DNA of 64,000 bases from Squalus acanthias (GCA_030390025.1 CM059452.1:7750001-7814000), one strand, 5' to 3'. Shown: positions 4,637 through 53,806, numbered from the stretch's first letter. Made by a program: numbers and translations. Notes: generated by a model from the sequence alone, not told the origin.

Positions 4637-4642
4637 TTTATT
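4637..4642 (-). terminator. Candidate poly(A) signal for membrane IgM mRNA
   Basis: AATAAA on the minus strand about 435 bp past the TM2 stop. An alternative AATAAA lies at 5009-5014. Confidence 0.5.
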
Positions 4643-5076
4643 AATAATTTCACAGAGAACAATTTACAGAGAAGTTTTTAAAAAGTTAACATCAAAGTGA
4701 ATATAACAACTGAGCGTCACATTGAGACCAGAATACAGGCGGTCTGAGCTGCCAGTTATCTGTACAACTGTAACAGACACCAGGAGCTCAACATAAAGAG
4801 AAGGGAACAATCGTGGATTAGGAACGAGAAACGTTATTATTTACACATGAAACATTCAAACAACTGTAAGATGCATTTACATTATGGTCACGATTATCTC
4901 AAACATTTCAAACACAGAGACGGAAATCCCGTTTATGATTTTCTCAGCTACAGATTCTGATCTATTAAGTGAAGGCATTTGACTCTGAGAATCACCAAGA
5001 GGATATATTTTATTTTCATGACACAGAGATGTTAATAAACAAAGGAGGAAAATCCACGGCGTCCAAATTCAACCGT

Positions 5077-5085
5077 TCACTTCAC
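5077..5085 (-). CDS. IGHM: IgM TM2 exon (VK-stop)
   Basis: atctctctgtcacag|GTG AAG TGA completes the KVK cytoplasmic tail after TM1. Confidence 0.82.
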   Translation of the reverse strand: MK

Positions 5086-5216
5086 CTGTGACAGAGAGAT
5101 AAAAGAATGAAGCAGAGATTTAGTGGTTTGTGGCATTTATCTCAGGGATTTATCAATGAAACTTTGTCAAACCACTTCAGTCAGATTGAAGTGTGAATGG
5201 ATTGAGTCTTTTCAAC

Positions 5217-8200
5217 TTCTTCTCATCTTAGGCAGTCCCTGGGAACCGAGGATGACTTGTTTCCACACTAACAATGGGTTCTCAGGTGACTGATGAGTCC
5301 AATGCGGGACCGACAGTCTCTGTCACAGGTGGGGCAGACGGTGGTTGAAGGGGCGGGTGGGTGGGGTGCTTGGGTTGACGTGCGCTCCTTCTGCTCTTTG
5401 CGCTTGGCTTCCGCTTGCTCCCGGCGAAGAGACTCGAGGTGTTCGGCGCCTTCACGGATGCTTCTTCTCCACTTTGTGCAGTCTTGGGCCAGGGATTCCC
5501 AGGTGTCGGTGGGGATGTTGCACTTTTTCAAGGAGGCTTTGAGGGTGTCCTGGAAGCGTTTCCTCTGCCCACCTGGGGCTCTCTTGCCGTGTCGGAGCTC
5601 CGAGTAGAGCGCTTGTTTTAGGAGTCTCGTATCGGGCATGCGGACAATGTGACCCGTTCATCAGAGCTGATCGAGCGTGGTCAAAGCTTCGATGCTGGGG
5701 ATGTTGGCCTGAGCGAGCACACTGACGTTGGTGCGCCTAACCTGCCAATGGATTTGCAGGATCATGCGGAGGCAGCGTTGGTGTTACCTCTCCAGTGCTT
5801 TGAGGTGCCTGCTGTACATGGTCCATGTCTCTGAGGCATACAGCAGGGCGGGTATCACTGCTGCTCTGTAGACCATGAGCTTGGTGCTGGGTATGTGGCA
5901 CTGGTCTTCAAACACTCTCTTCCTCAGGCGACCGAAGGCTGCACTGGCACACTGAAGGCGGTGTTGGTCTTCGTCATCGACGTCTGCCATTGTTGACAGT
6001 AGGCTGTCGAGGTATGCAAAGTGGTCCACGTTGTCCAAGGCCTCGTCATGGATTTTGATAATCAGGGGGCAGTATTGTGTGGGGAGGGCAGATTGGTAGA
6101 GGACCTTTGTCTTCCGGATGTTTAGTGAAAGGCCCATGCTCTCATACGCTTCGGTGAAGGTGTTGACGATAGTTTGGAGTTCGGCCTCAGAGTGTGCGCA
6201 GACGCAAGCGTCGTCTGCATACTGTAATTCGATGACAGAGGATGGGACGACCTTGGATCTGGACTGGAGGCGACGGAGGTTGAACAGTTTTCCGTTTGTT
6301 CTGTAGATTAGCTCCACTCTAGCAGGGAGCTTACTGAGGGTGAGATGGAGCATTGCAGCCAGGAAGATCGAGAAGCGCGTTGGTACGATGACACAGCCTT
6401 GCTTGATACGCTTCGTACGTGAATTAGGTCTGTGGTAGATCCGTTGGTCAGGATCCTGGCTTGCATGTCATCGTGAAGCAGGCAGAGGATGGTTACAAAT
6501 TTTTGATGGCACCCGAATTTGCGGAGGATACTCCATAATACCTCACGGTTGACAATGCTGAAGGCCTTTGTGAGGTCAAAGAAGGCGATGTACAGTGGTT
6601 GGTGCTGTTCCCTGCATTTCTCTTGTAATTGACGTGCGGTGAAGATCATGTCCATTGTGCCCCTTAGTGGGCGGAATCCGCATTGCGACTCTGGGAGGAG
6701 CTCTTCAGCCACTGGGAGAAGGCGATTGAGGAGGATTCTTGCGATGACTTTCCTTGTGGCAGTCAGCAGGGAGACTCCTCTGTAATTACCGCAATTGGAC
6801 TTGTCACCTTTCTTGAGGATGGTCACCATTACGGCATCTCTGAGATCCCCTGGCATGCTCTCCTTCTTCCAAATAAGAGAAATGAGTTCATGTATTCGCG
6901 CCAATAGTGTTTCTCCGCCATGCTTCAGCGCCTCGGTGGGGATTCCATCTGCTCCTGAGGCCTTGTTGTCCTTCAGTTGTCGGATGGCCTTTTCAACCTC
7001 ATGCCGGGCTGGGGTTGTGCTGAGGTGGTTGCGGGTAGCGTGCTGCTGGATGGAGTTGAGGACACTCGCTTCGAAGACAGAGTCTCGGTTAAGGAAATCT
7101 TCGAAGTGCTCCTTCCAGTGGGCACTGACTGCCTCTCTGTCCTTGATGAGTACCTCTCCGTTCTTGGCCCGCAGTGGGGTAGGGCCTTGGGTGCTTGGGC
7201 CATAGATGGTCTTGACTGCGCTAAAGAATCTACACACGTTGTGGTTGTCGGCTTGTTGCTGGATCTCCTGCGCTTTCTCCACCCACCATCTGTTCTTTAG
7301 GTCGCGAGTTTTTGTTGGACCTCGGCCTTCAGGCGTCTGTAGAGCTGCTTTCTTGCTCTCTTGTTCTGTTTCTGCTTCCAGATCAGGAATGCCTTGCGCT
7401 TGCGGCTTATTAGCTCCTGGATCTCCTGGTCGTTCTCGTCGAACCAGTCTTGGTGTTTCCTGGTCGAGTGACCGAGTGTCTGTTCACATGTGCTGATTAT
7501 GGAGGCCTTGAGTGCAGACCAAGCGCTGTGGACACTTTTGTCTCTGCATTACTGGGAGCCGTCACGTTGTTTTTGAGGCGCAGCCTGAATAGGGCTTTCT
7601 CAGCAGGGTGTTTGAGTGCTCCAGCGTTGATTTTCCTGCGCCATTATTTCTGTTGCTGACGCTGTTTTGGGGCTACATTGATGGAGATGACAGAGCAGAT
7701 TAGGCGGTGGTCTGTCCAGCAGTCGTCAGCTCCTGTCATGGCGCGGGTGATATGGACATCCTTGCTCGGACGATGACGTAGTCCAGCAGATGCCAGTGCT
7801 TGGACCGAGGGTGTTGCCTTGAAGCCTTGTACCTGTCTCTCTGACGGAACAAAGTGTTGGTTTTGACAAGGCCAGGTTCTAAGCATTTCGTCAGGAGGGT
7901 ACCGTTGGAGTTGGCTTTCCCTACCCCTTCTCTGCCGATCACACCTCCCCAGAGGTCTGTGTCCTTTCCAACTCTGATGTTGAAGTCGCCGAGGAGGATC
8001 AGCTTGTCGCCCTTTGGGACTCGGGACAGGGATTGTTGGAGACTGAAGTACACTTCCTCTTTGGTCTCCTCTGTGGCTTCCAGTGTTGGGGCGTATGCAC
8101 TGATGACCGTAGCGCACTGATTCTGGGCTAGGGTGAGCCGTAGAGTCATGAGGCGTTTGTTTATTCCACAAGGGGAGTCTCTGAGACATTCAACTAGCTC

Positions 8201-8595
8201 ATTTTTTATGGCGAAGCCTATCCCATGGAGACGGCGTTCTTCTTCAGGTTTGCCTTTCCAGAAGAAGGTGTAACCACCACCTTGCTCCTTGAGCTGGCCT
8301 TCCCCTGCCCACCGGGTCTCGCTTAGGGCGGCGATGTCCATGTCGAAACGTCTGAGCTCCCGGGCAACAATAGCAGTACGGCCTTCCAGTCTGTCACTGT
8401 TGGGGTTGTCCATGAGAGTCCTGACGTTCCAGGACCCGAACTTCATTTTAAAGGGTGGAAAATGCCTGTGCGTGAATTCTTTTAACGTGGGGTGGCAGTT
8501 GCACACCAGCTACCACACGGGCTTGACAAAGCAAAGTCTTGGTCCAATGGAAAGGGGATCCAAGACGATTGGAGACCAGGCTCTGCTACATCGGC
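5217..8595 (-). mobile_element. Near full-length RTE-clade LINE (AP endonuclease + RT), frameshifted, in the TM1-TM2 intron
   Basis: MKFGSWNVRTL..DIAALSETRW..ILLGDFN (APE domain); PESQCGFRP, FFDLTKAF and LQYADD (RT); C-terminal CPTCDRDCRSRIGLISHLRTH. Split over several frames. Confidence 0.92.
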
Positions 8596-8719
8596 CGAGC
8601 ACACACACACAAACATACTCCAACTGCCCTCCTCCCTCCTCCCGCAGGTCCTCTCTGCCTGGGTTTCACACGCTGCAGTGTGGTCCCCCCGACCCCGCTG
8701 CTGGTCCACGCTGCGCCAC

Positions 8720-9130
8720 TCCTGGGCCTCGACCTCGCTGCTGGGCTCGTCCTCGCTCCTGGGCCTCGTCCTCGCTCCTGGGTCCCGACCTCGCTCCTGG
8801 GCCCCGTTCTCGCTCCTGGGTCCCGACCTCGCTCCTGGGCCTAGATCTCGCTCCTGGGCTCCGTACTCGTCCCTGGGCCTCGTCCTCGCTCCTGGGCCTC
8901 GACCTCGCCCCTGGGTCTTGTCCTCGCTCCTGGGTCCCGACCTCGCTCCTGGGCCTCGACCTCGCTCCTGGGTCCCGAACTCGCTCCTGGGCCTCGTTCT
9001 CGCTCCTGGATCCCGTCCTCCTTTTAGTGTGTCTCCTTCCAGTGAGTGTGTCCCGCGGTGCGTCTCCTTCCAGTGAGTGTGTCCCACGGTGCGTCTCCTT
9101 CTAGTGAGTGTATCCCGCGGTGCGGCTCCT
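8720..9130. repeat. GC-rich minisatellites (about 19-bp CCTCGCTCCTGGGCCTCGA-like and about 30-bp GTGCGTCTCCTTCCAGTGAGTGTGTCCCGCG-like units)
   Basis: Visible tandem repetition; it produces the spurious ORFs at 8289-9135. Confidence 0.85.
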
Positions 9131-9142
9131 TCCACTTCTCAC

Positions 9143-9270
9143 CTTCACGAGAGTGACGGCAGTGCTGTAGGAAATGCTCAGGACGAACAGGATGATGAAT
9201 GTGGAAGCGGTTGTCCAGATGTTGCCGTTCTCTTCCTCATAGTCTTCAATCGAGATGTGGTCTGAGGAAT
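9143..9270 (-). CDS. IGHM: IgM TM1 exon
   Basis: ccccgtag|(D)SSDHISIEDYEEENGNIWTTASTFIILFVLSISYSTAVTLVK|gtgag. Typical Ig transmembrane (CART) pattern, in phase with the internal Cmu4 donor at 14069. Confidence 0.93.
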
Positions 9271-9914
9271 CTACGGGGATGTAGAGGCGGAAATATATTA
9301 AGATCGTTTATTAATCCAAGATATCATATTATTATTATATATTCTCCTTTCTTTTCCTTAAGTTATTAGTTTGTTCTCTAATTTATTTTTTAATGTATAT
9401 CTTGTGTTAATTTAATCACTCTCAGCAATCTATCTCTGTTCCTAACTCCACAGCCGATCTTCCTTTATGATCCTCCTAAAGTCCGTGTTGGACAATATGA
9501 CATTTTTTCTTCAATGACATACGCAAATTGATTTTGCATTAATTTCGTACGATTTATCAGTCGGGAATAATATGATAAAATATCGAGGGATGTTTACTGA
9601 CTAAAATCGATTATTTTAACGACAGGTTTTTATAGATAGTTATTTGGAGACTGTCAAGGGAGCTGGGAAAGAGATCAGATGTGAGTTATAATCTTGCTTA
9701 TTTGTTTCTTATGGCAATGCTCTGAACATAATTAACTTGTATCAGTTTCCAACAAGAACATTGATTCAGTGTATGTGTAGGACCAGAATAGAGAAATGTG
9801 AGATGTTACGTTATCAGGAATTATTTATTCAGTACAATCGTTGAAGACTGTGTCCGTAAAAACTGCATTTTAATTCTACATTCGTCGATAGCCTGACGTT
9901 TTTTGGGCGCTTTA

Positions 9915-10450
9915 GTGATTGTGTTTGTGTGTACGACGAACTTTTGTTTTGGATTAGTCTGAGTTTCTGTGTTAATGTGTGTGTTGATGTGTAAGTGTGT
10001 GTGTATTTATGTTTAAGTGTGTGCGTGTTTTGTATAAGTGTTTGTCTATATTTACGTGTCAGCACGTGCGTATTTAGGTGCAACTGTGTGTGTTTGCCTG
10101 TATGTGTGTGTGTTTGTGTGTAATTGTGTATGTGTTTATGCAAGCGTGTGTGTGTGAATGCGTGTGTTTGTGTGTGTTTTGTGTAATTGTGTGTGTGTAT
10201 TTTTGCTATTGTTCAAAGTTTCAGAGAGTACCAATAACTGGGTCTGATAATGACGCTGTGTATTATATTCTGGGTATGTGTAATATACGGTGTCAGTGTG
10301 TTAATGTGTGTGTTTGTGTGTAAATCTGTGTGTGCTTGTGTGTAAGTGTGCACTTACAATAAACACACATACTTACACAAAATCGCAAACACACTTACAC
10401 ATAAACACAGACACACTCACTTTACACGCATTCTTCCCCGCTCTGTGTAA
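9915..10450. repeat. Degenerate (TG)n/(CA)n low-complexity tract
   Basis: Long imperfect TG dinucleotide runs. Confidence 0.8.
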
Positions 10451-10651: not shown

Positions 10652-11415
10652 GGGCCAAAAATTCGGCACTTGCCGGGTGAGTACGCGCTGTGTGCTCACC
10701 CGGGAGAGGCTCCTGAAGTGCCGGTTTCCTGCATGCACTACGCATGCGCGGGAAAACGGAACTACCGGTTTCGTGAAGGGACCGGTTCAGAGGTGAACCG
10801 CGTGCGCGGTAGAGGCTCCGCGCACGCAACGAACTTAGGTTTTTTGTAGGTTTCTCCGGGAGGGTAAGTATTGAAGAAGCTGCGCTTTTAAAAAGGAGGC
10901 GCGAGACCCGTTTTCAACAAGGTAAGTGGTTAATTAATTACAATTTAAATTTTTTTCCAACAGGTTTATCTTTTTTAGATACTTTAAAGAAACGTAAGTG
11001 TATTTTTAGCACTGTTAAAAAGAATTTTAATTTTTTCAAAAATTTAAATTTTTGTTTAAAGTAGTTAATTTATTTAACTTATAGTTATTTTAAAAATGTG
11101 ATGTTTTTTAAAAATGTATTTTAAGTTTAGGTTTTGTTTTGGGGCCGATTTCAATTCAAAGATTTGACAGGTCTTCCTGTAAAATCATTGAATGAAAGAT
11201 GGTCTGCTGCCATTGGCTCTCCATGGCCCACGTGATCCCAGGGGACGCATCATACTAACTACGCCCCTGGGATACACAAGCACTGCGCGCAGGCAGTTGG
11301 GGGAGGCCCAGGAGCTGAAGTCCCCATGGGCCGAGAGGTCAACGGCAAGCACGGTAGGTAGGTGCGCGCGGGATCCTTGCACCCGCGGAAAGCCAGGGAG
11401 CCTAATTTCTGGGCC
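10652..11415. mobile_element. Non-autonomous TIR element (MITE-like), copy 1
   Basis: Ends GGGCCAAAAATT...AATTTCTGGGCC; internally homologous to 60746-61505; no coding capacity. Confidence 0.72.
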
Positions 11416-11544: not shown

Positions 11545-13575
11545 ACCCCTCTCTATGATGGGAGATTGGGAGGGACAGTGGGTTCACAATTGCACTTCCC
11601 CCTCTCTCTGGTGAGCGAGTGGGAGGTGCAGTGGGATCACAATTCCCCTTTACCCTCTCTCTGGTGGAGGATTGGGAGGTACAGTGGGTTAAAAATTGAC
11701 CTTCCCCCTCTCTCTGGTTAGGGAGCGGGAGGTACAGCGGGTTAACAATGGCCCTTTCCTCTCTCTCTGGTGGGGGAGTGCGGGTACACTGGGTTAATAA
11801 TTGCCCTTTCCCCTCTCTCTGGTGGGGGAGTGGGAGGTACAGCGGGTTAACAATTGCCCTTTCCCCTCACTCTGGTGGCAGAGTGGGGGTAGAGTGGATT
11901 ACCAATTGCCCTTTCCCCTCTCTCTGTTGCGGGAGTGAGAGGTACAGTGGGTTAACAATTACCCTTTCCCCTCTCTCTGCTGGGGGAGTGGGAGTACAGT
12001 GGGTTAACAATTACCCTTTCGCCTCTCTCTGGTAAGGGAGTGAGAGGTACAGTGGGTTAACAATTACCCTTTCCCCTCTCCCTGGTGGGGGAGTGGGGGT
12101 ACATTCGGTTAACAATTGCCCTTACCTGTCTCTCTTGTGCGGGAGTGGGAGGTACAGTGGGTTCACAATTGCCCTTTCCGTCTCTCGGGTGTGGGAGTGG
12201 GGGTACAGTTGGTTAACAATTGCCCTTTCCCCTCTCTCTGGTGGGGGTGTGTGAGGTACAGTGGGTTAACAATTGCCCTTTCCCCTCTCTCTGGTGAGGC
12301 AGTGGGAGGTACAGTGGGTTAACAATTGCCCTTTCCCCTCTCTCTGGTGGGGGAGTGGGAGGTACAGCGGGTTAACAATTGCCCTTTCCCCTCACTCTGG
12401 TGGCAGAGTGGGGGTAGAGTGGATTACCAATTGCCCTTTCCCCTCTCTCTGTTGCGGGAGTGAGAGGTACAGTGGGTTAACAATTACCCTTTCCCCTCTC
12501 TCTGCTGGGGGAGTGGGAGTACAGTGGGTTAACAATTACCCTTTCGCCTCTCTCTGGTAAGGGAGTGAGAGGTACAGTGGGTTAACAATTACCCTTTCCC
12601 CTCTCCCTGGTGGGGGAGTGGGTGTACATTCGGTTAACAAATGCCCTTACCTGTCTCTCTTGTGCGGGAGTGGGAGGTACAGTGGGTTCACAATTGCCCT
12701 TTCCGTCTCTCGGGTGTGGGAGTGGGGGTACAGTTGGTTAACAATTGCCCTTTCCCCTCTCTCTGGTGGGGTGTGTGAGGTACAGTGGGTTAACAATTGC
12801 CCTTTCCCCTCTCTCTGGTGAGGCAGTGGGGGTACAGTGGGTTAACAATTGCCCTTTCCCCTCTCTCTGCTGGGGGAGTGGGAGGTACAATGGATTAACA
12901 ATTGCCCTTTCCCCTCTCTGTGGTGGGGAGTGGGGGGTACAGTGGGTTAACAATTGCCCTTTCCCCTCTCTCTGGTGGGGGAGTGTGAGGTACAGTGGGT
13001 TAACAATTGCCCTTTCCCCTCTCTCTGGTGGGGGAATGGGAGGTACAGTGGGCTGACAATTGCCCTTTCCCCTCTCTCTGTTGGGGGAGTGTGAGGCACA
13101 GTGGGATAACAATGGCCATTTCCACTCTCTCTGGTGGGGAATGGGTGTACAGTTGGTGAACAATTGCCCTTTCCCCTCTCTCTGCTGGGGGAGAGGGAGG
13201 TACAGTGGGTTAACAATTGTCCTTTCCACTCTCTCTGGTGGGGGTGTGTGAGGTACAGTTGGTGAACAATTGCCCTTTCCCCTCTCTCTGGTGGGGGAGT
13301 GGGCGGTACAGTGGGTTAGCAATAACCCTTTCCCCTCTCCCTGGTGGGGGAGTGGGAGGTACAGCGGTTTAACGATTGCCCTTTGCCCTCTCTCTGGTGG
13401 GGGAGTGGGGGTACAGTGGGTTAACAATTGCCCTTTCCCCTCTCTCTGGTGGGGGAGTGGGAGGTACAGTGGGTTAACAATTGCCCTTTCCTCTCTCTCG
13501 CTTGGGGGAGTGGGGGTACAGTGGGTTAACAATTGCCCTTTCCCCTCTCTCTGGTGGAGGAGTGGGGGTACAGTT
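11545..13575. repeat. 53-bp G/C-tract minisatellite (about 38 units) between the secretory tail and TM1
   Basis: Unit AACAATTGCCCTTTCCCCTCTCTCTGGTGGGGGAGTGGGAGGTACAGTGGGTT, with a higher-order 525-bp duplication. Confidence 0.95.
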
Positions 13576-13972
13576 CGTGTTCGTGTGCGGCCTCATTTCC
13601 GATCGCAGAGGAAGTGATGCTGTAAAATAAAATTGGCCCCAATTCTGAAGGGATGGACAACACGAGAAACAGGGACACCGAGATCTAAATGTACCGCGTT
13701 TGTTTGTCGGAAGTGGGAACTTTACAGATTCCCCCCAGCGGGAGGAAAGCTGCTGACGTGACTTTGAGGAATCCTTTCATGAAAGAACTTCAGTCTGTCT
13801 CTAACCCGTGTTGTATCTGAGCTGGGAGCGCTGGCTGTACAAGCCTTGGGCTCGAGACCGGCAAATATCCTGCTTCAGATAAACAGCCCTCCCCTTGGCA
13901 AAAATGGAAAACAAAATTAATTGAGCGGCTGTGTGTGTAACTGACGATTGGAAGAAAAGGCCTTTTTTTGTT

Positions 13973-13978
13973 TTTATT
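13973..13978 (-). terminator. Poly(A) signal for secreted IgM mRNA
   Basis: AATAAA about 30 bp after the secretory-tail stop codon. Confidence 0.75.
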
Positions 13979-14006
13979 TAAGAACTGAAATGCAATCGAG
14001 AAATTC

Positions 14007-14398
14007 TCATTGACAAGAATTGACGGTGTCCATCAGAACAAGGGAAATGTTCACAAAACTGGGTTTACCGCTGGATTTATTAGCGGTTCTGTTGATGATC
14101 TTCAAGGGGATCGCTTCATGTCCCACCACACAGGAGTAAGAAGCGCCGCTGGCCCACTCCTCCGCTGCAATGGATAACAGGCTGTACATGAAGAAGGAAC
14201 TGCTGCCGTTCTCCGCCATCACCTCGGTGTTCTTGTAGTTGCCGGAATTCACCGGCTTGTCATTGACGGTCCACTTGACGAAGATCTCTCGCGGGGAGAA
14301 ACCTTTCACTAAGCAGGTGAGGGTGACGAACCACTGAGCGGAGACTTCTTCTGCCGGGGGCAGGAGGACAGACACGGACGGTTCCCGCGGATCTTCAA
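14007..14398 (-). CDS. IGHM: IgM Cmu4 exon + secretory tail
   Basis: ttctgcag|(V)[53 protein letters not shown]|GTAAA internal donor. Tail [20 protein letters not shown] has the N-glycosylation sequon and penultimate Cys. Confidence 0.96.
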
Positions 14399-14915
14399 CT
14401 GCAGAACAATTACAATAAAGGTCAATAAACTGGAGAATTCCAGGGACAATGATACCGACTGTTAAATGTGAGAGAAATGTGCTTTGCGCTGAATTTTAAA
14501 GGATTCCCTTTTCACCTCTGTGTCCTGTCCGGTTTTCCAGCCCGGAGCAGTGGGAGATACAATCCTTCTCTCTGGGAGCTTGAAGAGTTGGACTGGAAAA
14601 TTATATAGAATTCACATCATAGAAACAGACCATTCGGCCAACTGGTCAATGCCGCTGTTTATGCTCCACTCGAGACTCCTCCCACCTTACTTCATCTAAC
14701 CCCAATAACATATCCTTCTATTCCTTTTTCCCTCATTGACTTATACAGCTTCCCTTTAAATGCAACATATCGGGTCCCAGAGGGTTTAGTTCGTGGAATT
14801 ATCCATTGAATTATCAGAGCAGTCCATTAAAACACTTAATATAACGAAACGGGCCGTGCACAAGCACTGGAAATAGTCACAGAGTCTCACTTACTGCTAC
14901 AATCTCACCGCTCAC

Positions 14916-15224
14916 CTTTTTCCTTGTGGATGGAATCTCTTATAGGAGTCGGCATATCCTGATGGCTCACCACGCAGTAGAATTCATCCCCTCTCAGCCA
15001 GGCTTGTGTCGAGATGTTTAAGTTGCTGATCACGCTGTTGGGAGCCTCTCCGCGTTGGACGGCAATCTCTGATTTCAAAGTCTTCTTTTCTCGGGTCCAG
15101 GACACGTTGACTCCATAAGGAGCATTAGACACGACGCAGGTTAAGGTCACCGTCGCCTCCAGTAAGATCTGTTCTAGTGACGGTTGCGGAAGAGTGATTT
15201 CTGGTTTGCTGCATGAGGAATCAA
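14916..15224 (-). CDS. IGHM: IgM Cmu3 exon
   Basis: ttcacag|(V)[65 protein letters not shown]|gtgag; 309 nt, phase 1. Confidence 0.95.
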
Positions 15225-15929
15225 CTGTGAACAGAAATGAAAGTCAAGCAAAGCTTCATCTTGAGAATCAGGACACCAGTATTCAGCCTTCACTCTCTCA
15301 GGGAGAATAAATCAACTTTGAGAGATTAACCTCTCGTTGTTGCTTAAACACCATCGTTATTGGAAAGACAAGGAATTGGCAACGATTACGGGAGACTCTT
15401 TAACATTTCCTGTGTATTTGCTCTCAGAGCCTCCTGTAATGGGCTGTGAAGCCAATATCCGGCGTAAAAAGTGAATAAATTCGGGCGCAATTTATTTGGC
15501 ACTAAATAGCGCTCTATCCGAAATCGCTTGCTCCTTTACGCCCGTCTATAGATCCTTGTTCCCGAACGCATTCCCACTCATTATAATTTTCCCGCCTCCA
15601 GCGTCAAGAGCTCTACACGAAAATTACACTGCTTCAAAACGAGTGTCAAATGAAATCCAGGATTTTAGGTGCAACTGGAAACATTGTTAATTTTCTGTTG
15701 TCTTGTTGCGATTTTTGGGGCGATGAAAATGTGCAGGAATCAGTTGCAGCCCCTGTCAGAGGAGAAGTGAAAGGTCGGGAGTTGGAATTCCAAGGGGTCT
15801 TTTGTGGTGGAGAATAATTTGTAATGCCGATGTGAAGTAATTTGTTCATTTCTGTCATTAGTGAGCATTTCTCATCTCTGGTGAGAGACAGTCAGAAGGA
15901 AATATGACCGCAGGGCAGTAATAACAACA

Positions 15930-16470
15930 TGGAAACAGGAGTAGGCCATTCAGCCCATCCAGCCTGTTCCGCCATTCAATGAGATCATGGTTGATCTGCA
16001 CCTCAACACCATCTACCTGCCTTGTTTCTGTAACCCTTGATACCCTTGCCTAACAAATATCTATCAATCTCAGTTTTGAAATTTTCCGTTGACCCCCAGC
16101 CTCAACAGCTTTTTCGGGGAGAGAGTTCCAGATTTCCACTGTCCTTTGTGTGAAGAAGTGCTTCCTGACATCACCGCTGAACGGCTCAGTTCTAATTTTA
16201 AGGTTATGCCCCTTGTTCTGGACTCCCGCACCAGAGGAAATAGTTTCTCTCTATCTCCCCTATCAATTCCATTTATCAACTTAAACACCTCAATTAGATC
16301 ACCTCTTAATCTTCTATAATCAAAGGAATACAAGCCTATTCTGTGCAACCTCTCCTCATAATTTAACCCTTTCAGCCCCGGTATGATTCAGGTAAATTTG
16401 CGTTGCATCCCCTCTAAAACCAATATATCCATCCTGATGTGTGGTGACCAGAATTGAACGCAGTTCTCTA
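15930..16470 (-). mobile_element. CR1 LINE 3' fragment
   Basis: LYSFDYRRLRGDLIEVFK..SRTRG C-terminal motif plus CR1-type 3' tail. Confidence 0.8.
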
Positions 16471-16679
16471 AATAGGGAAGATGCCCTTTCTAGCAGTGGG
16501 TCCCGAGACAGTTACCAGCAAAGAGTTCCAGACACCTACTGTCGCTCCGAATATGATCAGCCAACTCAGGATTAACCTGAGACCAAGGACACCTCACTCA
16601 CTGACTGGCATCAGAGCAGAGGGAAATCTTCTTTGGCGAGGTTGTGGAATCCTGAACCATGAGGAATCCTGATTCAGAG

Positions 16680-17100
16680 GATCGTGGGTTCAATTCTCAC
16701 TCCAAATACTTGAACACAAAATGTGAGCTGATACTTCCAGTGCAGTACTGAGGGAGCGCTGCACTGTCGGAGGTGCCATCTTTCGAAGGAGACGTTAAAC
16801 CGAGGCCCCGTCTGCCCTCTCAGTTGAACGAAAACGATCCCATGGAACTATTTCGAGGAAGAGCGGGGGAGTTCTCCCAGGTGTCCTGGCCAATACTTAT
16901 CCCTCAACAAACATCAGCAAATAATAAGATTATCTGGTCATTATCACGTTGCTGTTTGTGGGACCTTACTGTCTGCAAATTGGCCGCTGCGATTTCTAGA
17001 TTACAGCAGTGACCACATTTCAGGAAGTACTTCCTTGGCGGAAAAGCGCCTTGGGACACCCGGAGGTCGGGAAAGGCGCTATGTAAAGGCAGTTCTTTCT
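16680..17100 (+). mobile_element. tRNA-derived SINE
   Basis: B-box-like GGGTTCAATTC near the 5' end; 3' tail GAAAGGCGCTATGTAAAGGCAGTTCTTT, related to copies at about 4140-4250 and 19560-19770. Confidence 0.65.
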
Positions 17101-17249
17101 TCTATTTTATATTGGAAGAAAACGCAAACAGCATGATTGTAAATTAGAAATAGAGCTTTCTCGGGGGAAACCTGAGACTGAGGACACCTCACTCACTGTC
17201 TGACATCACAGCTGAGGGAAACCTTTGTCGAAGTGATTGTGTCTCTTAC

Positions 17250-17561
17250 CCTTAGATCTGGAGATGTTTCGGCTTTGGGTGACCCCTTGATGAGAGACCT
17301 GGCAGGTATAGACCGAGCCGGCGAACCACTGCCCGGCGGGAAATGTCAGCCGACTGGTCGCCGCGAAGTTCCCGTTCAATTCAAAGACGGGAGAGGTGAC
17401 GAAGCCCGAATCCATGGGCTGTCCATTCTTCAGCCAATTCACGGTCAGTGACATTGGACGGAAATCGATGATTGAACAGACGGTGTTTGCAGACCTGCTG
17501 CTGATGATTTCTTCACTGGAACTCAGGGTGAGGATCACAGTTGGATGATGTACCACACGAT
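17250..17561 (-). CDS. IGHM: IgM Cmu2 exon
   Basis: tcttacag|(D)[59 protein letters not shown]|gtaag; 312 nt. Confidence 0.95.
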
Positions 17562-17619
17562 CTGTAAGAAAATACATTTTATTGGGATTATGCTGCAATT
17601 AAGAACTGTAAAGCAGTTG

Positions 17620-18140
17620 TTTGCATAGAATCTACAACACAGAAACAGGTCAATCGGCCCATCAGGTCGGTGTTTATGCTCCACATGAGCCTCCTCTCTC
17701 CCTACTTCATCTCCCCATCAACATAACCTTCTATTCCTTTCTCCCTCCTGTACTTATCTAGATTCCCCTGAAACGCATCTATTCTATTCGCCTCAACTAC
17801 TCCATGTGGTAGCGAGTTCCACATTCTACCCACTCTCTGGGTAAAGAAGTTTCTCCTGAATTGCCTATTGGATTTATTAGCGATTATCTTATATTTATGG
17901 CCCCTAGTATCGGGCTCCTCCTCAAGCAGAAATATTGTCTCTACATCTAACGTTTCAAACCCCTTCATAATTTTAAAGACCTCTATTCGGTCCCCCCTCA
18001 GCCTTCTCTTTTCTAGATTAAAGATCCCAAACCCGTTCAATCATTCCTGACAGTTACAATTTTTCAGTTCTGGTAAATCTTGTAAATCTTCTTTTGAACT
18101 TCTCCATCATTCTGTATCATTCTTATAAAATGGAAACCAG
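17620..18140 (-). mobile_element. CR1 LINE 3' fragment
   Basis: LEKRRLRGDRIEVFKIMKG..TRGHKYK..FFTQRV..WNSLP. Confidence 0.85.
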
Positions 18141-18740
18141 AACTATGGACAGTACAGTAAGTGTGATTATGAAGACCAGACCTGTACACAGTACTCTAAT
18201 TGTGATATGGAGACCAGACCTATGCACAGTTCTCTAAGTGTGATATGGAGACCAGACCTGTGCACAGTACGCTAAGTGTGATATGGAGACCAGAGCTGTA
18301 CACAGCACTCTAAGTGTTATTATGGAGACCATCCTGTACACAGTACGCTAAGTGTGATATGGAGACCAGACCTGTACACAGCACTCTAAGTGTGATATGG
18401 AGACCAGACCTGTGCACAGTACTCTAAGTGTGATATGGAGACCAGACCTGTACACAGTGCTCTCAGTGTGATATGGAGACCAGACCTGTACACAGTGCTC
18501 TAAGTGTGATCTGGAGACCAGACCTGTACACAGCACTCTAAGTGTGATATGGAGACCAGACCTATACACAGTACTCTAAGTGTGATATGGAGACCAGACC
18601 TATACACAGTAATCTCAGTGTAATATGGAGACCAGACCTGTGCACAGTACTCTAAGTGTGATATAGAGACCAGACCTGTGCACAGTACTCTAAGTGTGAT
18701 ATGGAGACCAGACCTGTACACAGTACTCTAAGTCTGGTCT
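18140..18740. repeat. 38-bp minisatellite derived from CR1 RT coding sequence
   Basis: Unit GTGTGATATGGAGACCAGACCTGTACACAGTACTCTAA; the minus strand translates as HLEYCVQVWSPY, the CR1 motif. Confidence 0.88.
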
Positions 18741-18815
18741 AACCAAAGTTGTATAGAAGTTGAACATAACTTCTCTGCTTTTCACAGTTTTCCCCCTGTA
18801 TCCCACAACACTAAC

Positions 18816-19115
18816 CTGGCATTTTGACGCTCCAGTCCGTCTCACTTCGTCGAACCTGGCAGTAGATGGCGCTGCTCCCCACCTCTGACTCGGTGATGGT
18901 TAACTGGCTGCTCAGGGTGTAGGTTCCCTTCTTGTTGAACACTGACGGGTAGGTCTTCAATCCAGTGGTGATCGGCTCTTTATCTTTACTCCAGGAAAGG
19001 CTGGTGATTTCCGGGAAGTAGTCCATCGCCAAACAGCCGTAGGTGACGGGGCCGCCGGTGTTGGGTTGTTCACAGGAGGAGAGCAGGACGTAGAGGGTGG
19101 GAGGAGACTGTGTCG
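18816..19115 (-). CDS. IGHM: IgM Cmu1 exon
   Basis: ttcccag|(A)[68 protein letters not shown]|gttag; 300 nt; shark Cmu1 signature. Confidence 0.95.
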
Positions 19116-20899
19116 CTGGGAAAGAATGGCCAATTGAACAAGTTAGACTCTGTAATCCGTGCTTATAACATAACCAAACAACTCGAAATGTGACTACAGG
19201 ATGAACAATTCCATCATTTGCCGATCAAAACCTAGATCAGTATTTGAGTTTCTGTGACTTGTGAGACCCGACGTGAAATGCCTTCATGTGACTCCAGTCT
19301 TGTACATAAGAAAAGTCAGGAGTCTGAAAGGGGCATTCTGTCCATGAGGCCCCTTTATACCGAGTGAATGCTGGAATATTGTATCGTGGACTTCCTCCAG
19401 CTCTTGATCCCCTGTTATGGAACACTCCCCTCATTCCCCAACCACTTTCACATTAGATTCTTTCACATTCTGTCCACTGAGCTCCTCCCTACATCCTTTT
19501 GCTGTCAGCCTCTTATTATCAGCACAGAATCAGGCCATTTCCATGATATCAAAGTGTCGTCATCTCTCCATTGTAAGATGCTGCCTTAAAACCTACCTCT
19601 TTGACCAAGCTTTTGGTCAACTGTCAGAGTAACTGCCAACCATACTAAAGAATAAAATGATATATCCTTATGTGGCTCGGTGTCAGATTGTATCTGCTTC
19701 CGCTCCTGTGAATCGTCTTGGGACGTTTTACTACGTTAAAGGCGCTATATAAATGCAAGTTGTTGTTTTCAGGGGATAGACTTGTTTGAATAGCGGTGGG
19801 ATTAGTTCTCCTAATCACACAACTCCTACAGCTAGATCTACTAGTTGTATTACCTTTAAAACAAATCCCAGCATGTTTATAGAGCATGACCAGAATTATA
19901 AAATATTACAACTTTACAGCACAGAAGGAGGCGATTCGGCCTATCGCTCCTCTGAAAGATCTCTCCACCAATCCCTTGCACCTTCCAATTCCCAATCTTC
20001 TCAACTGTGCAATTTTATCGAGCTATTGTGGATTCTGCATGCAGCCCTCTTTCTGATAGGACATCCCATGTTTAACAGCCCCCTGTGTAGAAAAGTAGAA
20101 TAATACCCTCTCCCTTCATTCTGTTGCTGCTGATTTTCAATCAGTGCCAGTTACTCACCAACTCACCGACTCGGGGAAATATGTTTCCCGAATCCCTTCA
20201 TAAAACCCTTTAAAATTCCAAACCCCTCTATCAGACCTCATCTAAATCTTCTTTGTTCCCATGACAATAAAGGACGTTTACAATAAATGGTTGAAGTCTC
20301 CTTTAAAATGTGAGCGGAATAATTTAGCGCACAGATTTGAATAGGGAACTTTTGCACAGCCTGGTTTCTAAGATTCAAGCTTTAGGTGAATCGGGATTGA
20401 TTCGAGTCTCTCTCTTTCCTTCTCAGAATTGGAGGGAGAGCGATGCAGTGTGACTTGTGCTCTATCCCATTCTACTGAATGGATATCTCCAAACTTTCCT
20501 CCTCTTAATCACTCAATTAAATAATCCGAATTAAATACAATTCCCAAAGCCGGTTATATGGAACGATGCTCTTTAAATGCTCCATTTCATTTTCCAAATT
20601 ACTTTCCAACCTCCCACCAGTGAGAACAGGCGCTGCTTTCTGGGCCGTTACAGTCACTTCTTGTTGCTGTTTCTACCGAACATAATCTAAACATCGGGAC
20701 AGGTTTCTTCTTTAAATATCTAATATTGGCAATCCTTAAACATTATAAATCGATTGGTTATCAGCGGGTTCTATGCAAGGAAGGACAAACAATAACTAAT
20801 GTGCTGACTGCTGATATGGGCAACTCTGGCTTCTGGTTTGTGCGGGGATGCAAGAGCAGGGGGACCTGGGGAGCTTATTCACAAATCTTTGAAGGTGGC

Positions 20900-21510: not shown

Positions 21511-22239
21511 CACGACTCAGCGGAATTAGTTCTTCCCGATTTAATGGAAAGAAACGCTTCATAATGTTGAACACCTCTATCAGATCTATTTTATTGTTGG
21601 TTATAATGCAAGAGGATATTTAAAATAAAAGGAACTGAGGAATTTGACTCAAATGATCCAATTGGATACCGTCACAGAGTCTTAAAGCTTATTGTGAATG
21701 ACGACTCATCGCAGGCTGACTGTTTGTCATTAAATGTTTCACAGAGGTGCGGCTCAGTGACTGTGAGCCTTGTGCTGTGACCCAGTCCAACAGCTGCACC
21801 TCACCCGAGTTTGTCCCGGCCTGGTACCTTTTTAAAAAAACAAATTGAGCGAAATAATGTTTTCAAACATAAGGTTCCCATGATGGTTATTTGGAGCGGG
21901 AGTCTCGACATTCTCCATTTAAATTGTCAAAATAACTCCCAGCCTCCCATCAGATCAGAACAGGCGCTGCTTTCTGGAGCGTTACAGTCACTTCCTGAAA
22001 CTGTTTGTTCTGAAAGTGAGCTCAGGATCAGGCCAATCTCATTCAATCATTATCTGACACTCAAAATGTTTAAAGTTTACCAATTCATTAAAAATTGGGC
22101 AGTTTTATTTGCAATAATGTTAAACTCAATTAATGCGCGGTTGTTTCATCGGAGCAATGGAAAGTTTTATTTTTATATATCTGGCTCGAGAACTCACACT
22201 TTATTAGTTGGATGCACATTAAGCTTCCTTGAACAACAC

Positions 22240-22610
22240 GGGACATAGCACTCACAGATCTGTTACAGTACAGATACAGAGTAAAGCTCCCTCTGCACTG
22301 CCCTGCCATGCGCTGTATGATCAGGTATAGGAAGGGAATGAATCCGAGCAACGCCAAGTCTGCACAGTACTGTCAAACACTCCGGGTAAGGCACCGCACT
22401 GGTTAAATACAGAGTAAAGCTCCGTCTACATTCCACAATCAAACACTCCCAGGGCAGGTGCAACACGGGCTAGATACAGAGTAAATTCTCCCTCTACACT
22501 GAACCATCAAAGATTCACGGGGCATAACAGCACGGGTTAGATACAGAGTAAAGCTCCCTCTACACTGTCCCATCAAACACTCCCAGGGCAGGTACAGCAC
22601 GGGTTAGAAA
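22240..22610. repeat. About 65-bp satellite (GATACAGAGTAAAGCTCCCTCTACACTGTCCCATCAAACACTCCCAGGGCAGGTACAGCACGGGTTA)
   Basis: Several degenerate tandem units; a related inverted unit lies near 4095-4280. Confidence 0.75.
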
Positions 22611-25600: not shown

Positions 25601-26107
25601 ATGACCATTGGTGAACATTAGATTAATAGCTGACAATGTAAACATCACAAATAAAAATACGGTAAAATATCTTAAGATTATTTTTGACCTCTAAAATTTT
25701 CTGTTTTCTGCCTACAATCTTATTTCAAACACATTTAGTCACATAATGTTTACATTTGATCAGAAAACCTGTAACCATTAGATGTCACCGAGATTAAACA
25801 TTGTAGAAACTCCAAACAGTTCAACAACCGTTGGGTATTTAAGTAACCCAGGCTCACAGTCTCAACAGCAGATAAACACCAAATCACATCAATCAGGGGT
25901 TCAATCCCTCAACAACAATTTTATTGCTGGAGAAACTGTTTAAATCTATTATCACTTTTCAGCAGAATCAAATGAAACATTGCAAAAAATCTCTTTACAG
26001 ACTCCACCGAACCCAAGTTTCAGTGAATGAATTAATTATTGAAATAAACAGAAATATAAAATAAAGACACAAATACAACAGTTACTGAAAGAGTGAATGT
26101 TTCTTAC

Positions 26108-26155
26108 CTGCAGTCACCGTCACCATGGTGCCTTGTCCCCAGTATTCGAGGTAGT
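26108..26155 (-). CDS. IGHJ: IgH J segment (unrearranged)
   Basis: YLEYWGQGTMVTVTA G|gtaag, with the WGXG motif. Confidence 0.96.
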
Positions 26156-26194
26156 CACAGTGTTACATTCCCCGGGCTGGGTCACACAATAACC
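26156..26194 (-). other. JH 23-RSS
   Basis: Heptamer CACAGTG 26156-26162, 23-bp spacer, nonamer ACAATAACC 26186-26194 (read on the plus strand). Confidence 0.95.
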
Positions 26195-26520
26195 GGCTCT
26201 GTGTAAAACAGACAGAAATCCAACATTAGTTTAAATATTCACATCCCAGAGGAAAAGTAAAGTCACGATGGATCTTCATAAAATGATGCATGTGTCAATG
26301 GATACTTTTCACTCTTTATAAATTCCCTGATGTTTTATATTTCACAGAGTAACCCATGAACAGTTAATGAAATCACCAACTGATCAATGATTAATTATCA
26401 CAGTTTATCCATCTTAAGCTGTGCTAGTAGACAGTGCTGGACACAAATAGGATTTCACTGCATCGTCAGTTGGATTGTGAAAGCGAGCACTGACCCAGAC
26501 TCACTCAATTAGTGCTGAGG

Positions 26521-26548
26521 GGTTTTTGTATTGACAGTAACTGCTGTG
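26521..26548 (-). other. 12-RSS at the 3' end of the joined VH-D(D)
   Basis: CACAGCA + GTTACTGTCAAT (12 bp) + ACAAAAACC. Confidence 0.93.
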
Positions 26549-27044
26549 CCACCCAGCACCGCTGTACTCTCTTGCACAGTAATAGATGGCGGTGTCTTCG
26601 GTCCTCAGGTTCTTCATGTCCAAAGCGAAGATGCTGTTTGAAGTGTCTTTGGAGGCAGTAAATCGACTCTCAATCCCTGGGGCGTGATGCTTGTTCGATG
26701 AACTGTAATATCTAACCAGCCACTCCAGCTCCTGTCCGGGAACCTGTCGGAACCAGTGCATGACGTAGCTGCCAAGGTCGAACCCGCTGGTTTTACAGGT
26801 CAGTCTCAGGGAGCCTCCGGGACTCCTGGTCTCTGCCTCTGGCTGAGTCAACACGACATCCGACTGGACACCTGTAAAAACAATCAAAAACCCCGAGGAT
26901 TAATCCTGGTGAAATGATTCCTGACTCTGTAACATTCCAGAGAGAGACTAACACTGAGACAGTAACAGTGAGAGACTTGGACAATAAAAACTACTCACCG
27001 GATAAGAAAGCCAACAACAGACTGAGAGAAATCGCCGACCTCAT
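26549..27044 (-). CDS. IGHV: IgM VH pre-joined to D sequence (leader 26999-27044; VD(D) exon 26549-26871), open frame
   Basis: Leader [16 protein letters not shown]|gtgag. tttacag|[69 protein letters not shown], then a 12-RSS. Confidence 0.95.
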
Positions 27045-27136
27045 CCTCCTGGCAATGGGTGGGAAATGGTTCTAACAAGAACTCACTGAGCAAACCCGCT
27101 CCCGGACTGGTGTATTGCGGTCCCAGTGACCGGCAG

Positions 27137-27220
27137 TTAAATACCCGGTAGAAGGGGGCGAGGTTACAGGCGCCGCCTTGTGATTCCCCCGATAGAGGCG
27201 GCTACTGGATCCACGTCACA
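27137..27220 (-). promoter_or_regulatory. VH promoter: TATA-like box, CTCF-like motif, CRE-like element; no octamer
   Basis: TATTTAA 27137-27143; TCACAAGGCGGCGCC 27169-27183; TGTGACGTGG 27211-27220. Shark VH promoters are known to lack the octamer. Confidence 0.55.

Positions 27221-53750: not shown

Positions 53751-53806
<56 letters not shown>

What the first reader, a model, noticed from the sequence alone, without database searches (positions are those of the whole stretch)
4637..27220. A complete, apparently functional IgM heavy-chain gene nested inside a TCR alpha/delta V array
Seen: L, VD(D), JH, Cmu1-4, secretory tail, TM1, TM2 and both poly(A) signals, all with GT-AG junctions in the correct phase and no stops. 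An intact TCR V (424-928) lies on the same gap-free sequence about 3.7 kb beyond the 3' end of the gene. Ten more TCR V segments lie upstream (39-62 kb). Established: shark IgH genes are self-contained V-D-D-J-C clusters, and IgHV-TCRdelta chimeric rearrangements and Ig-like V segments in the shark TCR alpha/delta locus have been reported. Inference: this is a whole BCR/antibody transcription unit, not a stray VH or a decayed cluster, interdigitated with TCR V genes. That makes it a hybrid B/T antigen-receptor locus needing lineage-specific accessibility control over a few kb.
Basis: partly seen in the sequence, partly recalled or inferred. Interest (0 to 1): 0.92.

Follow-up and report, generated by a model that had tools for sequence, protein, structure and literature searches.

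The report
Shark IgM gene among TCR V genes
This is a complete shark antibody (IgM) heavy-chain gene lying among T-cell-receptor V gene segments, a layout published for sharks and rays in 2025, so it is a good example and not a new kind of locus.

Summary
On the minus strand, 27044 to about 4637, lies a complete cluster-type IgM heavy-chain gene. It has a split leader, a VH already fused in the germline to D sequence and ending in a 12-spacer RSS, one JH with a 23-spacer RSS, Cmu1-4, a secretory tail, TM1, TM2 and poly(A) signals. Every junction is AG/GT in phase and no exon has a stop.

TCR alpha/delta-type V segments with 23/24-spacer RSS flank it. One intact V (424-928) lies tail-to-tail 3.7 kb beyond the gene on gap-free sequence. 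Ten V elements lie at 39-61 kb, across a 197-N gap; six are intact.

Three RNA-like runs express this IgM family strongly and use the predicted Cmu1-Cmu2, Cmu3-Cmu4 and J-Cmu1 junctions. At five listed places every contig covering them read another letter than this cluster's, so its own expression is unproven.

Flajnik et al. 2025 (PMC12227049) already reported IgH clusters linked to TCR alpha/delta with TCR-type V exons between them. The scan's first readers noted the same layout in other windows of this genome. The 12/23 rule already forbids most cross-joins here. Linkage to TRAC/TRDC and synteny could not be tested. Interest is modest.

The parts
26999..27044 (-). IgM leader exon ([15 protein letters not shown], phase 1 out)
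   Evidence: ATG at 27044, donor GTGAGT after 26999
26549..26871 (-). VH exon fused in the germline to D sequence (ends ...[12 protein letters not shown])
   Evidence: Pfam V-set E 1.4e-17. PDB best matches are antibody VH/VHH chains. Identity is 77% to Heterodontus HV01 and 80% to a partial S. torazame VH.
26521..26548 (-). 12-spacer RSS after the fused VDD (CACAGCA-12-ACAAAAACC)
26156..26194 (-). 23-spacer RSS in front of JH (GGTTATTGT-23-CACTGTG)
26108..26155 (-). JH (YLEYWGQGTMVTVTA), 393 bp from the VDD coding end
   Evidence: In run X9, loose ends at the Cmu1 acceptor read the reverse complement of 30 nt identical to this J.
18816..19115 (-). Cmu1 exon (300 nt)
   Evidence: Pfam C1-set E 3.7e-14. 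RNA depth 24,873-534,091 in bin 18856-19032.
17250..17561 (-). Cmu2 exon (312 nt)
   Evidence: C1-set E 2.5e-17. Joint 17561->18816 in X11 (2 contigs) and X9 (2 contigs), none in X13 or DNA run X1.
14916..15224 (-). Cmu3 exon (309 nt)
   Evidence: C1-set E 8.4e-10. All three listed Cmu3-Cmu4 joints leave from 14916.
14007..14398 (-). Cmu4 exon with secretory tail (…[20 protein letters not shown]). The internal donor for the membrane form lies after 14069.
   Evidence: C1-set E 2.1e-22. Identity is 81% to a Chiloscyllium punctatum partial protein and 65% to Callorhinchus IgH.
13973..13978 (-). AATAAA for the secreted form
9143..9270 (-). TM1 exon (…NIWTTASTFIILFVLSISYSTAVTLVK)
5271..8509 (-). 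Decayed LINE in the TM1-TM2 intron, in the same orientation as the gene (endonuclease plus a reverse transcriptase split over two frames)
   Evidence: Pfam Exo_endo_phos and RVT_1
5077..5085 (-). TM2 exon (V-K-stop)
4637..5014 (-). Membrane-form 3' UTR with AATAAA at 5014-5009 and 4642-4637
424..928 (+). Intact TCR alpha/delta-type V (split leader, V exon, CACAGTG-23-ACAAAAACT), tail-to-tail with the IgM gene
   Evidence: Pfam V-set. The best chains with a single matched stretch in PDB are TCR alpha or delta.
39366..39647 (-). TCR-type V pseudogene (two in-frame stops at the WY position)
41336..41620 (-). TCR-type V with Leu in place of Trp41; RSS CACAGTG-23-ACAATAACA
   Evidence: V-set
42490..42780 (-). 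Intact TCR alpha/delta-type V with a 23-RSS
   Evidence: The PDB single V-domain chains (109-113 aa) listed are all V-alpha domains.
45449..45505 (+). 19-codon fragment of a TCR V of the 592/49322/55668 family
45680..45967 (-). Intact TCR alpha/delta-type V, RSS spacer 24
46816..47277 (-). Intact TCR alpha-like V whose leader is not split (one ORF from ATG into V); 23-RSS
   Evidence: None of the 60 PDB rows shown is named as an antibody chain.
49322..49618 (+). Intact TCR alpha/delta-type V with a 23-RSS
52003..52293 (+). TCR-type V pseudogene (stop at the Trp41 codon), RSS kept
55668..55958 (-). Intact TCR alpha/delta-type V. With its flank it is an inverted copy of 173-1243 (93.7% over 1071 bp).
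60390..60677 (-). Open TCR-type V with an atypical FR2 (WCSQ) and heptamer CACTCTG, spacer 24

Best explanation
This is an ordinary, structurally intact elasmobranch IgM heavy-chain minilocus of the partly germline-joined VDD-J type. It lies among TCR alpha/delta-type V segments in the region published as the elasmobranch antigen-receptor complex.

How it would work (the steps below are inferred from the anatomy; only family-level splicing is shown):
1. In a B-lineage cell, one RAG-mediated deletion of 393 bp joins the 12-RSS behind the fused VDD to the 23-RSS in front of JH.
2. Transcription starts upstream of the leader, and splicing gives L-VDDJ-Cmu1-4.
3. Use of the tail and the AATAAA at 13978 gives secreted IgM.
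4. Use of the donor after 14069 with TM1 and TM2 gives the membrane receptor.

The neighbouring TCR V segments carry 23/24-spacer RSS. They belong to the TCR V pool, or are its relics, and do not take part in the IgM gene. The 12/23 rule forbids TCR V to JH joins. It also forbids joins of this pre-joined VDD to 12-RSS TCR D or J partners.
For: - All exons, phases, GT-AG junctions, RSS and poly(A) signals are present, and no exon has a stop.
- Pfam gives V-set for VH and C1-set for each of the 4 C exons.
- VH and Cmu4 are closest to shark IgM sequences.
- A Scyliorhinus torazame V model (P0015) runs through the same heptamer-12-nonamer after extra D-like residues. VD(D)-joined genes therefore exist elsewhere.
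- In three RNA-like runs, depth is 24,605-534,091 on exon bins and 0-40 on unique intron bins.
- The joints 17561->18816 and 14398->14916, and J sequence spliced at the Cmu1 acceptor, match the predicted borders. None of these joints is in DNA run X1.
- TCR identity of the flanking V: chains with a single matched stretch are TCR alpha or delta, and no antibody appears among the 60 rows. All V bodies carry 23/24-spacer RSS.
- PMC12227049, sections 6 and 15, reports the same organisation.
Against: - At 14002, 14083, 14085, 15053 and 15084, every contig covering them in the four runs laid reads another letter than the window.
- The commoner Cmu3-Cmu4 junction contigs carry a different first 3-6 nt of Cmu4. 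Expression of this particular cluster is therefore not shown.
- The one junction row that fits this cluster is a single contig, marked 'between: not known'.
- The cluster has Ala where 5 of 5 homologues covering that column have Val.
- There is no ATGCAAAT octamer anywhere in the window.
- A LINE lies in sense orientation in the TM1-TM2 intron.
- The link to the ten upstream V elements crosses a 197-N gap.
- TRAC/TRDC were not located.
Confidence: 0.8

Rival explanations
1. The cluster looks intact but is silent or barely used: a young non-functional paralogue in a very large IgM cluster family.
For: - The window's letters at five listed places in Cmu3, Cmu4 and the 3' UTR are absent from all contigs covering them in three RNA-like runs and one DNA run.
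- It carries private non-synonymous changes: Val->Ala in the tail region (5 of 5 homologues have Val), and Pro->Arg and Glu->Lys in Cmu3 (one search read).
- There is no octamer in the window.
- A LINE lies in the TM1-TM2 intron.
- DNA run X1 lays 38,423 contigs on 5.3 kb (7,772 at 99% or more). The family has many copies, and single members may be dispensable.
Against: - No stop, frameshift or broken splice site or RSS in about 1.9 kb of coding sequence.
- Contigs drop rare variants and the runs may come from other individuals, so absence proves little.
- Cmu1 shows no listed difference from the RNA contigs.
- One junction contig in X11 fits this cluster's Cmu4 5' end.
Confidence: 0.3
2. Assembly artefact: the IgM cluster and the TCR V segments were joined wrongly through repeats.
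For: - One side crosses a 197-N gap.
- The TCR V at 173-1243 is a 93.7% inverted copy of 55310-56376. Repeats of that kind can mislead assemblers.
- No run held more than 0.43 of the sampled words.
Against: - The 3' side is gap-free from TM2 to the V at 424-928.
- First readers noted the same neighbourhood in several other windows of the same piece and of other pieces (unchecked notes).
- Four other elasmobranch assemblies show TCR-type V exons between IgH clusters (PMC12227049).
Confidence: 0.05
3. The juxtaposition is functional cross-wiring. Either this VH feeds Ig-TCR delta trans-rearrangements, or the inverted TCR V 3' of Cmu joins the IgM cluster to give TCR-V/Cmu chains.
For: - Ig V to TCR delta trans-rearrangements are reported in nurse shark. 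This is cited in PMC12227049 sections 6 and 15; the original papers are not held.
- An inverted V behind C is a known feature of the TCR beta and delta loci (same paper, section 15).
- Other first-reader notes propose this for other windows.
Against: - Here VH is already joined to D and carries a 12-RSS.
- JH carries a 23-RSS and all TCR V bodies carry 23/24-RSS.
- No free 12-RSS lies in front of a D or J in this cluster, so a TCR V cannot make a productive join.
- The only 12/23-compatible pair is the TCR V RSS at 890-928 with the VDD RSS. These are convergent, and joining them would fuse two V coding ends head to head and delete J and Cmu.
- VDD(12) cannot join 12-RSS TCR D-5' or J partners. 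That spacer assignment is recalled from mammals.
Confidence: 0.05

Closest known systems
Elasmobranch antigen-receptor complex (AgRC): IgM/IgW/IgNAR clusters linked to TCR alpha/delta (Flajnik et al., Sci Adv 2025, PMC12227049)
   Same: A minicluster IgH gene lies on the same stretch as TCR alpha/delta-type V exons. [quoted passage not shown]
   Different: - The species of this window is not known to me.
- Linkage to TCR C genes, PSMB5 and UrIg2 could not be checked.
- Here the V segments are dense (11 elements in 64 kb, 7 intact) with canonical RSS, and one lies tail-to-tail 3.7 kb from TM2.
- The paper's coordinates (table S1) were not seen.
Germline-joined shark IgH clusters (VD-J, VDD-J and VDJ types of horned shark, nurse shark and others)
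   Same: V is fused to D sequence in the assembled germline. A 12-RSS faces a 23-RSS JH, so a single join remains. The VDD-J configuration is named in PMC2435157 (passages). Germline joining is the subject of PMC2193156 (search listing only).
   Different: - In PMC2435157, VDD-J is described as a somatic intermediate in nurse shark lymphocytes. Here it is the assembly consensus.
- Whether one or two D segments are included rests on my recollection of the shark RSS layout (V23; 12-D1-23; 12-D2-12; 23-J).
VH-delta / TAILV: Ig-like V segments inside TCR delta loci
   Same: A VH-type V lies among TCR V segments.
   Different: TAILV and VH-delta are stand-alone V segments used with TCR delta D-J-C. 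This VH has its own JH and a full Cmu with secretory and membrane ends, and it carries a 12-RSS, not a 23-RSS.
Inverted V behind the constant gene in TCR delta and TCR beta loci
   Same: A V with a 23-RSS lies a few kb beyond the last constant-region exon, in the opposite orientation (mentioned in PMC12227049 section 15).
   Different: In those TCR loci the inverted V joins a D with a free 5' 12-RSS by inversion. This cluster has no such partner, so the likeness is topological only.

Membership tests
Cluster-type elasmobranch IgM heavy-chain gene | Split leader plus VH of shark IgM type | tested here: met
   V-set. 77% to Heterodontus HV01, and 64-80% to nine cartilaginous-fish VH aligned.
Cluster-type elasmobranch IgM heavy-chain gene | Own D/J with RSS obeying 12/23, or a germline-joined variant | tested here: met
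   VDD with CACAGCA-12-ACAAAAACC and JH with GGTTATTGT-23-CACTGTG, 393 bp apart.
Cluster-type elasmobranch IgM heavy-chain gene | Four C1-set constant exons in phase 1 | tested here: met
   Pfam C1-set for 4 of 4 exons. Lengths 300/312/309 nt plus Cmu4, all AG..GT.
Cluster-type elasmobranch IgM heavy-chain gene | Secretory tail with Cys and an N-glycosylation site in the Cmu4 exon, an internal donor, and TM1 and TM2 | tested here: met
   Tail ...[14 protein letters not shown], conserved in 4 homologues that cover it. Donor G|GTAAAC after 14069, TM1 and TM2 (V-K-stop).
Cluster-type elasmobranch IgM heavy-chain gene | Transcribed and spliced as predicted | tested here: inconclusive
   The family is strongly expressed and the Cmu1-Cmu2, Cmu3-Cmu4 and J-Cmu1 borders are used. 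This cluster's private letters were not seen.
TCR alpha/delta V gene segments | V-set domain most like TCR V-alpha/V-delta and not like Ig or TCR beta/gamma | tested here: met
   Tested for four V segments from four sequence families. The reference set is PDB, mostly human and mouse. Alpha and delta cannot be told apart.
TCR alpha/delta V gene segments | 23-spacer RSS at the 3' end | tested here: met
   10 of 10 V bodies have heptamer-23/24-nonamer: 8 with spacer 23 and 2 with spacer 24. The 19-codon fragment has no 3' end.
TCR alpha/delta V gene segments | Physical linkage to TRDC/TRAC and use in TCR transcripts | not testable with these tools
Antigen-receptor complex (AgRC) of PMC12227049 | IgM, IgW, IgNAR, TCR alpha/delta, UrIg2 and PSMB5 on one linkage group | not testable with these tools
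   Unchecked first-reader notes place IgM, IgW-like and NAR-TCR elements on the same piece within about 1.3 Mb, and an IgNAR cluster 9.9 Mb away. No note mentions PSMB5.
TAILV / VH-delta | Stand-alone Ig-like V without its own J-C, with a 23-RSS, used with TCR delta | tested here: not met
   This VH is followed by its own JH and a complete Cmu, and it carries a 12-RSS.

The most novel reading that the evidence does not exclude
Germline VDD pre-joining may act as a recombination lock for IgM clusters that lie inside the TCR V field.
- Swapping the VH 23-RSS for a 12-RSS and using up the 5' RSS of the D segments removes this VH from capture by TCR D-delta.
- It also removes any landing site for the inverted TCR V that lies 3' of Cmu. 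The cluster can then make only IgM.
- If so, joined clusters should be enriched among those embedded in TCR V arrays.
- A repeated module of an IgM cluster plus an inverted TCR-type V would recall the inverted V behind C in TCR delta and beta loci. It would hint at a shared ancestral unit.
Probability: 0.12. Interest if true: 0.6.

Novelty: new member of a known kind. Interest (0 to 1): 0.3.

Why it matters
The window gives a base-level example of how closely antibody and T-cell-receptor genes are packed in cartilaginous fish. A full IgM unit and intact TCR V segments with working-looking RSS lie within a few kb of each other.

This bears on three questions:
- how Ig-TCR delta chimeric rearrangements arise;
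- how B and T lineages keep their receptors apart;
- how the translocon loci of higher vertebrates arose.

The principle was published in 2025. The added value lies in the exact anatomy, the RSS logic that limits cross-joining, and a testable idea about germline joining.

Tried and rejected
- Homology search with a TCR V found nothing: 2 candidates, none scored. The V segments were therefore classed against PDB only.
- Species identification failed. Best identities were 81% (Chiloscyllium punctatum Cmu4), 77% (Heterodontus VH) and 80% (partial S. torazame VH). Run and organism names were coded.
- Deiss 2019, Ott 2021 and Criscitiello 2010 are not held. What I say of them comes from the reference list and text of PMC12227049, and from recall.
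- Octamer search: 0 matches against 3.4 expected. I draw no firm conclusion, since shark VH promoter requirements are not known to me.
- Rfam: no match in the window.
- The TAILV reading was rejected, because the VH has its own J and C.
- The TCR-V/Cmu hybrid reading was rejected for this cluster on RSS spacers and orientation.
- A somatic origin for the VDD join was considered unlikely. An assembly consensus reflects the majority germline.
- The joined spliced model was neither built nor searched. Exons were translated and searched one at a time.
- Supplementary table S1 of PMC12227049 gives gene coordinates and may already list this locus if the species is one of its four. I did not see it.

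Full report
**What is in the sequence**

The window has one N run, at 28745-28941. Reading the minus strand from 27.4 kb downward and recomputing every boundary gives a complete IgM heavy-chain gene:
- Leader exon 27044-26999 ([15 protein letters not shown], donor GTGAGT).
- V exon 26871-26549.
- JH 26155-26108.
- Cmu1 19115-18816, Cmu2 17561-17250 and Cmu3 15224-14916.
- Cmu4 14398-14007, ending in the secretory tail ...[20 protein letters not shown] and a stop.
- AATAAA at 13978-13973.
- An internal donor (G|GTAAAC) after 14069.
- TM1 9270-9143 and TM2 5085-5077 (V-K-stop).
- AATAAA at 5014-5009 and 4642-4637.

All introns are GT..AG. All constant-region junctions are in phase 1, TM1-TM2 is in phase 0, and no exon contains a stop. 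Pfam gives V-set for the V exon and C1-set for each of the four C exons. The joined spliced model was not built or searched; each exon was handled alone.

**The V-D-J part**

The V exon does not stop after YYCAR. It runs on through seven more codons (EYSGAGW), and only then comes CACAGCA / 12 bp / ACAAAAACC. JH is preceded by GGTTATTGT / 23 bp / CACTGTG, 393 bp downstream.

- A VH followed by a 12-spacer RSS means V has already been joined to D sequence in the assembled germline, so one RAG join remains.
- Calling it VDD and not VD rests on the shark layout as I recall it (V-23; 12-D1-23; 12-D2-12; 23-J). I could not check that layout in a held paper.
- PMC2435157 (passages only) names the VDD-J configuration.
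- A Scyliorhinus torazame V model (P0015) reads through the same heptamer-12-nonamer after extra D-like residues. A whale-shark model (P0019) looks fully VDJ-joined.
- This agrees with the separate first-reader note s1-889883.

**Identity of the gene**

- VH is 77% identical to Heterodontus francisci HV01, 80% to a partial S. torazame protein and 74% to a Chiloscyllium punctatum protein.
- Its best PDB matches are antibody heavy-chain and VHH domains.
- The Cmu4 exon is 81% identical to a C. punctatum partial protein, 89% over 78% of its length to an unnamed sequence, and 65% to Callorhinchus IgH.
- The species was not identified.

**The flanking V segments**

I built an HMM from eight V regions of the window and searched it against all six-frame ORFs of 25 aa or more. 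I also ran tblastn and direct translations. Together these find 11 TCR-type V elements besides VH.

| Class | Elements |
|---|---|
| Open, with both Cys, Trp41 and an RSS (7) | 592-882 (+; gene 424-928), 42490-42780 (-), 45680-45967 (-), 46951-47214 (-), 49322-49618 (+), 55668-55958 (-), 60390-60677 (-) |
| Leu at the Trp41 position (1) | 41336-41620 (-) |
| In-frame stops (2) | 39366-39647 (-), 52003-52293 (+) |
| 19-codon fragment (1) | 45449-45505 (+) |

The V at 60390-60677 has an odd FR2 and the heptamer CACTCTG. All ten V bodies carry a heptamer-23/24-nonamer RSS.

Against PDB:
- The V at 46951 matches only T-cell-receptor chains; none of the 60 rows shown is named as an antibody chain.
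- For the V segments at 646, 42487 and 45680, the top rows are multi-domain antibody constructs whose scores add several domains.
- For those three, the best chains with a single matched stretch are TCR alpha or delta. In one search the single V-domain chains of 109-113 aa listed are all V-alpha domains.
- This reference set is mostly human and mouse, and it cannot separate alpha from delta.
- A protein search with one V found nothing.

They lie on both strands, and they are separated from the IgM gene by the N gap. The V at 424-928 is on gap-free sequence, tail-to-tail with the IgM gene, 3.7 kb beyond its last poly(A) signal.

**Expression**

The look-up of sequencing runs listed 21 coded runs. 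The best DNA holder has 0.43 of the sampled words. I laid X11, X13 (organism A), X9 (organism B) and DNA run X1 on 13900-19200.

- Depth pattern. The three runs guessed to be RNA behave as RNA. Summed depth is 24,605-534,091 on the bins that hold Cmu1-4 and 0-40 on unique intron bins (14431-14607, 15316-15492, 16555-16731). X1 is far more even.
- Cmu1 to Cmu2. The joint 17561->18816 is in X11 (2 contigs) and X9 (2 contigs), and in neither X13 nor X1.
- Cmu3 to Cmu4. All three listed joints leave from 14916. One (14398->14916; X11, 1 contig, marked 'between: not known') fits this cluster. The commoner ones carry 3 or 6 other letters at the start of Cmu4, so they come from paralogues.
- J to Cmu1. 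Nine loose ends at the Cmu1 acceptor in X9 read the reverse complement of 30 nt identical to this JH.
- Cmu2 to Cmu3. This joint is not among the 15 rows shown (42 more were not shown).

Against expression of this cluster itself:
- At 14002, 14083, 14085, 15053 and 15084, every contig covering them in the four runs reads another letter.
- Three of these are amino-acid changes private to the window: Ala for Val, Arg for Pro and Lys for Glu. At the first, 5 of 5 homologues have Val.
- Contigs drop rare variants, and the runs may come from other animals. This is absence of evidence only.
- X1 lays 38,423 contigs on 5.3 kb, so the IgM cluster family has many copies, introns included.

**How it compares with what is known**

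PMC12227049 (Flajnik et al., Sci Adv 2025) is the key paper. I read the abstract, all of sections 6 and 15, and further passages.

[quoted passage not shown] - It states that this proximity explains Ig-TCR delta trans-rearrangements.
- Its coordinate table (S1) was not seen.
- Three further searches turned up no other genomic description.
- PMC2435157 (passages) reports that shark IgH loci are partly rearranged but not transcribed in thymocytes. That fits Ig clusters lying in chromatin that is open in T-cell precursors.

The scan's first readers noted the same layout in other windows of this genome, for example s1-889954, s1-890157, s1-887986, s1-889864 and s1-889428. These notes are unchecked.

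**Mechanism and RSS logic (inference)**

- The IgM gene needs one deletional 12/23 join.
- TCR V segments (23/24) cannot join JH (23).
- The VDD (12) cannot join the 12-RSS of TCR J segments or of the 5' side of D-delta. Those spacers are recalled from mammals.
- The cluster has no free 12-RSS in front of a D or J. The idea raised in other notes (s1-889865, s1-889053), that an inverted TCR V behind Cmu could invert onto IgM D segments, therefore cannot work in this cluster.
- The only compatible pair is the RSS of the V at 424-928 with the VDD RSS. They are convergent, and joining them would fuse two V ends head to head and delete J and Cmu.

**Verdict**

Noticed in passing
window 46816-47277 (-): A TCR alpha-like V is read as one open frame from ATG through the signal peptide (MLRIYSVSLLIYTLICTDVSG) into the V domain. 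It therefore has no leader intron, although split leaders are described as canonical for antigen-receptor genes (PMC12227049, passage). Its RSS is intact.
   Followed up: partly
window 173-1243 (+) and 55310-56376 (-): These are inverted copies, 93.7% identical over 1071 bp, of a TCR V with its flank. The IgM cluster and most of the V array lie between them. 486-928 also matches 49216-49662 at 88% in direct orientation. This points to recent local duplication or inversion in the V array.
   Followed up: partly
window 11546-13574, 18130-18733, 8719-9020: There are long tandem arrays inside IgM introns: 53 bp x 38.6 between Cmu4 and TM1, 38 bp x 15.9 between Cmu1 and Cmu2, and 38 bp x 8 just 3' of TM1.
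   Followed up: no
window 5271-8509 (-): A decayed LINE (endonuclease plus a reverse transcriptase split over two frames) lies in sense orientation in the TM1-TM2 intron and ends about 190 bp before TM2. The intron holds one sense AATAAA, at 8165. It might affect the membrane form.
   Followed up: partly
window 40608-59111: CTCF-like motifs (CCASYAGRKGGCR) give 3 exact matches against 0.06 expected, and 13 with up to one mismatch against 1.48 expected. Eight of the 13 lie in the TCR V array, seven of them on the minus strand. Two plus-strand sites at 35423 and 36879 lie between the array and the IgM gene. None is convincing around the IgM gene. This agrees with note s1-889921.
   Followed up: partly
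window 17561-17564 (Cmu2 acceptor), run X13: Two loose ends read a J-like sequence directly onto the Cmu2 acceptor. Another X13 joint (17545->18813) carries 19 foreign letters. This may be a Cmu1-less isoform or a paralogue.
   Followed up: no
window 27045-27400 (-) and the whole window: There is no ATGCAAAT octamer on either strand anywhere in the 64 kb (0 found, 3.4 expected). A TATA-like TATTTAA lies about 100 nt upstream of the IgM start codon.
   Followed up: partly
window 10674-11321 and 60768-61411: A 650-bp stretch of the Cmu4-TM1 intron is 80% identical to the 5' flank of the TCR V at 60390-60677. It is probably a shared interspersed repeat.
   Followed up: no
window 14393-14398, 14083, 15053, 15084, 17484-17486: This cluster differs from the abundantly expressed paralogues by several mostly non-synonymous letters and by the first two codons of Cmu4 (V-E against A-K) (one search read).
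   Followed up: partly
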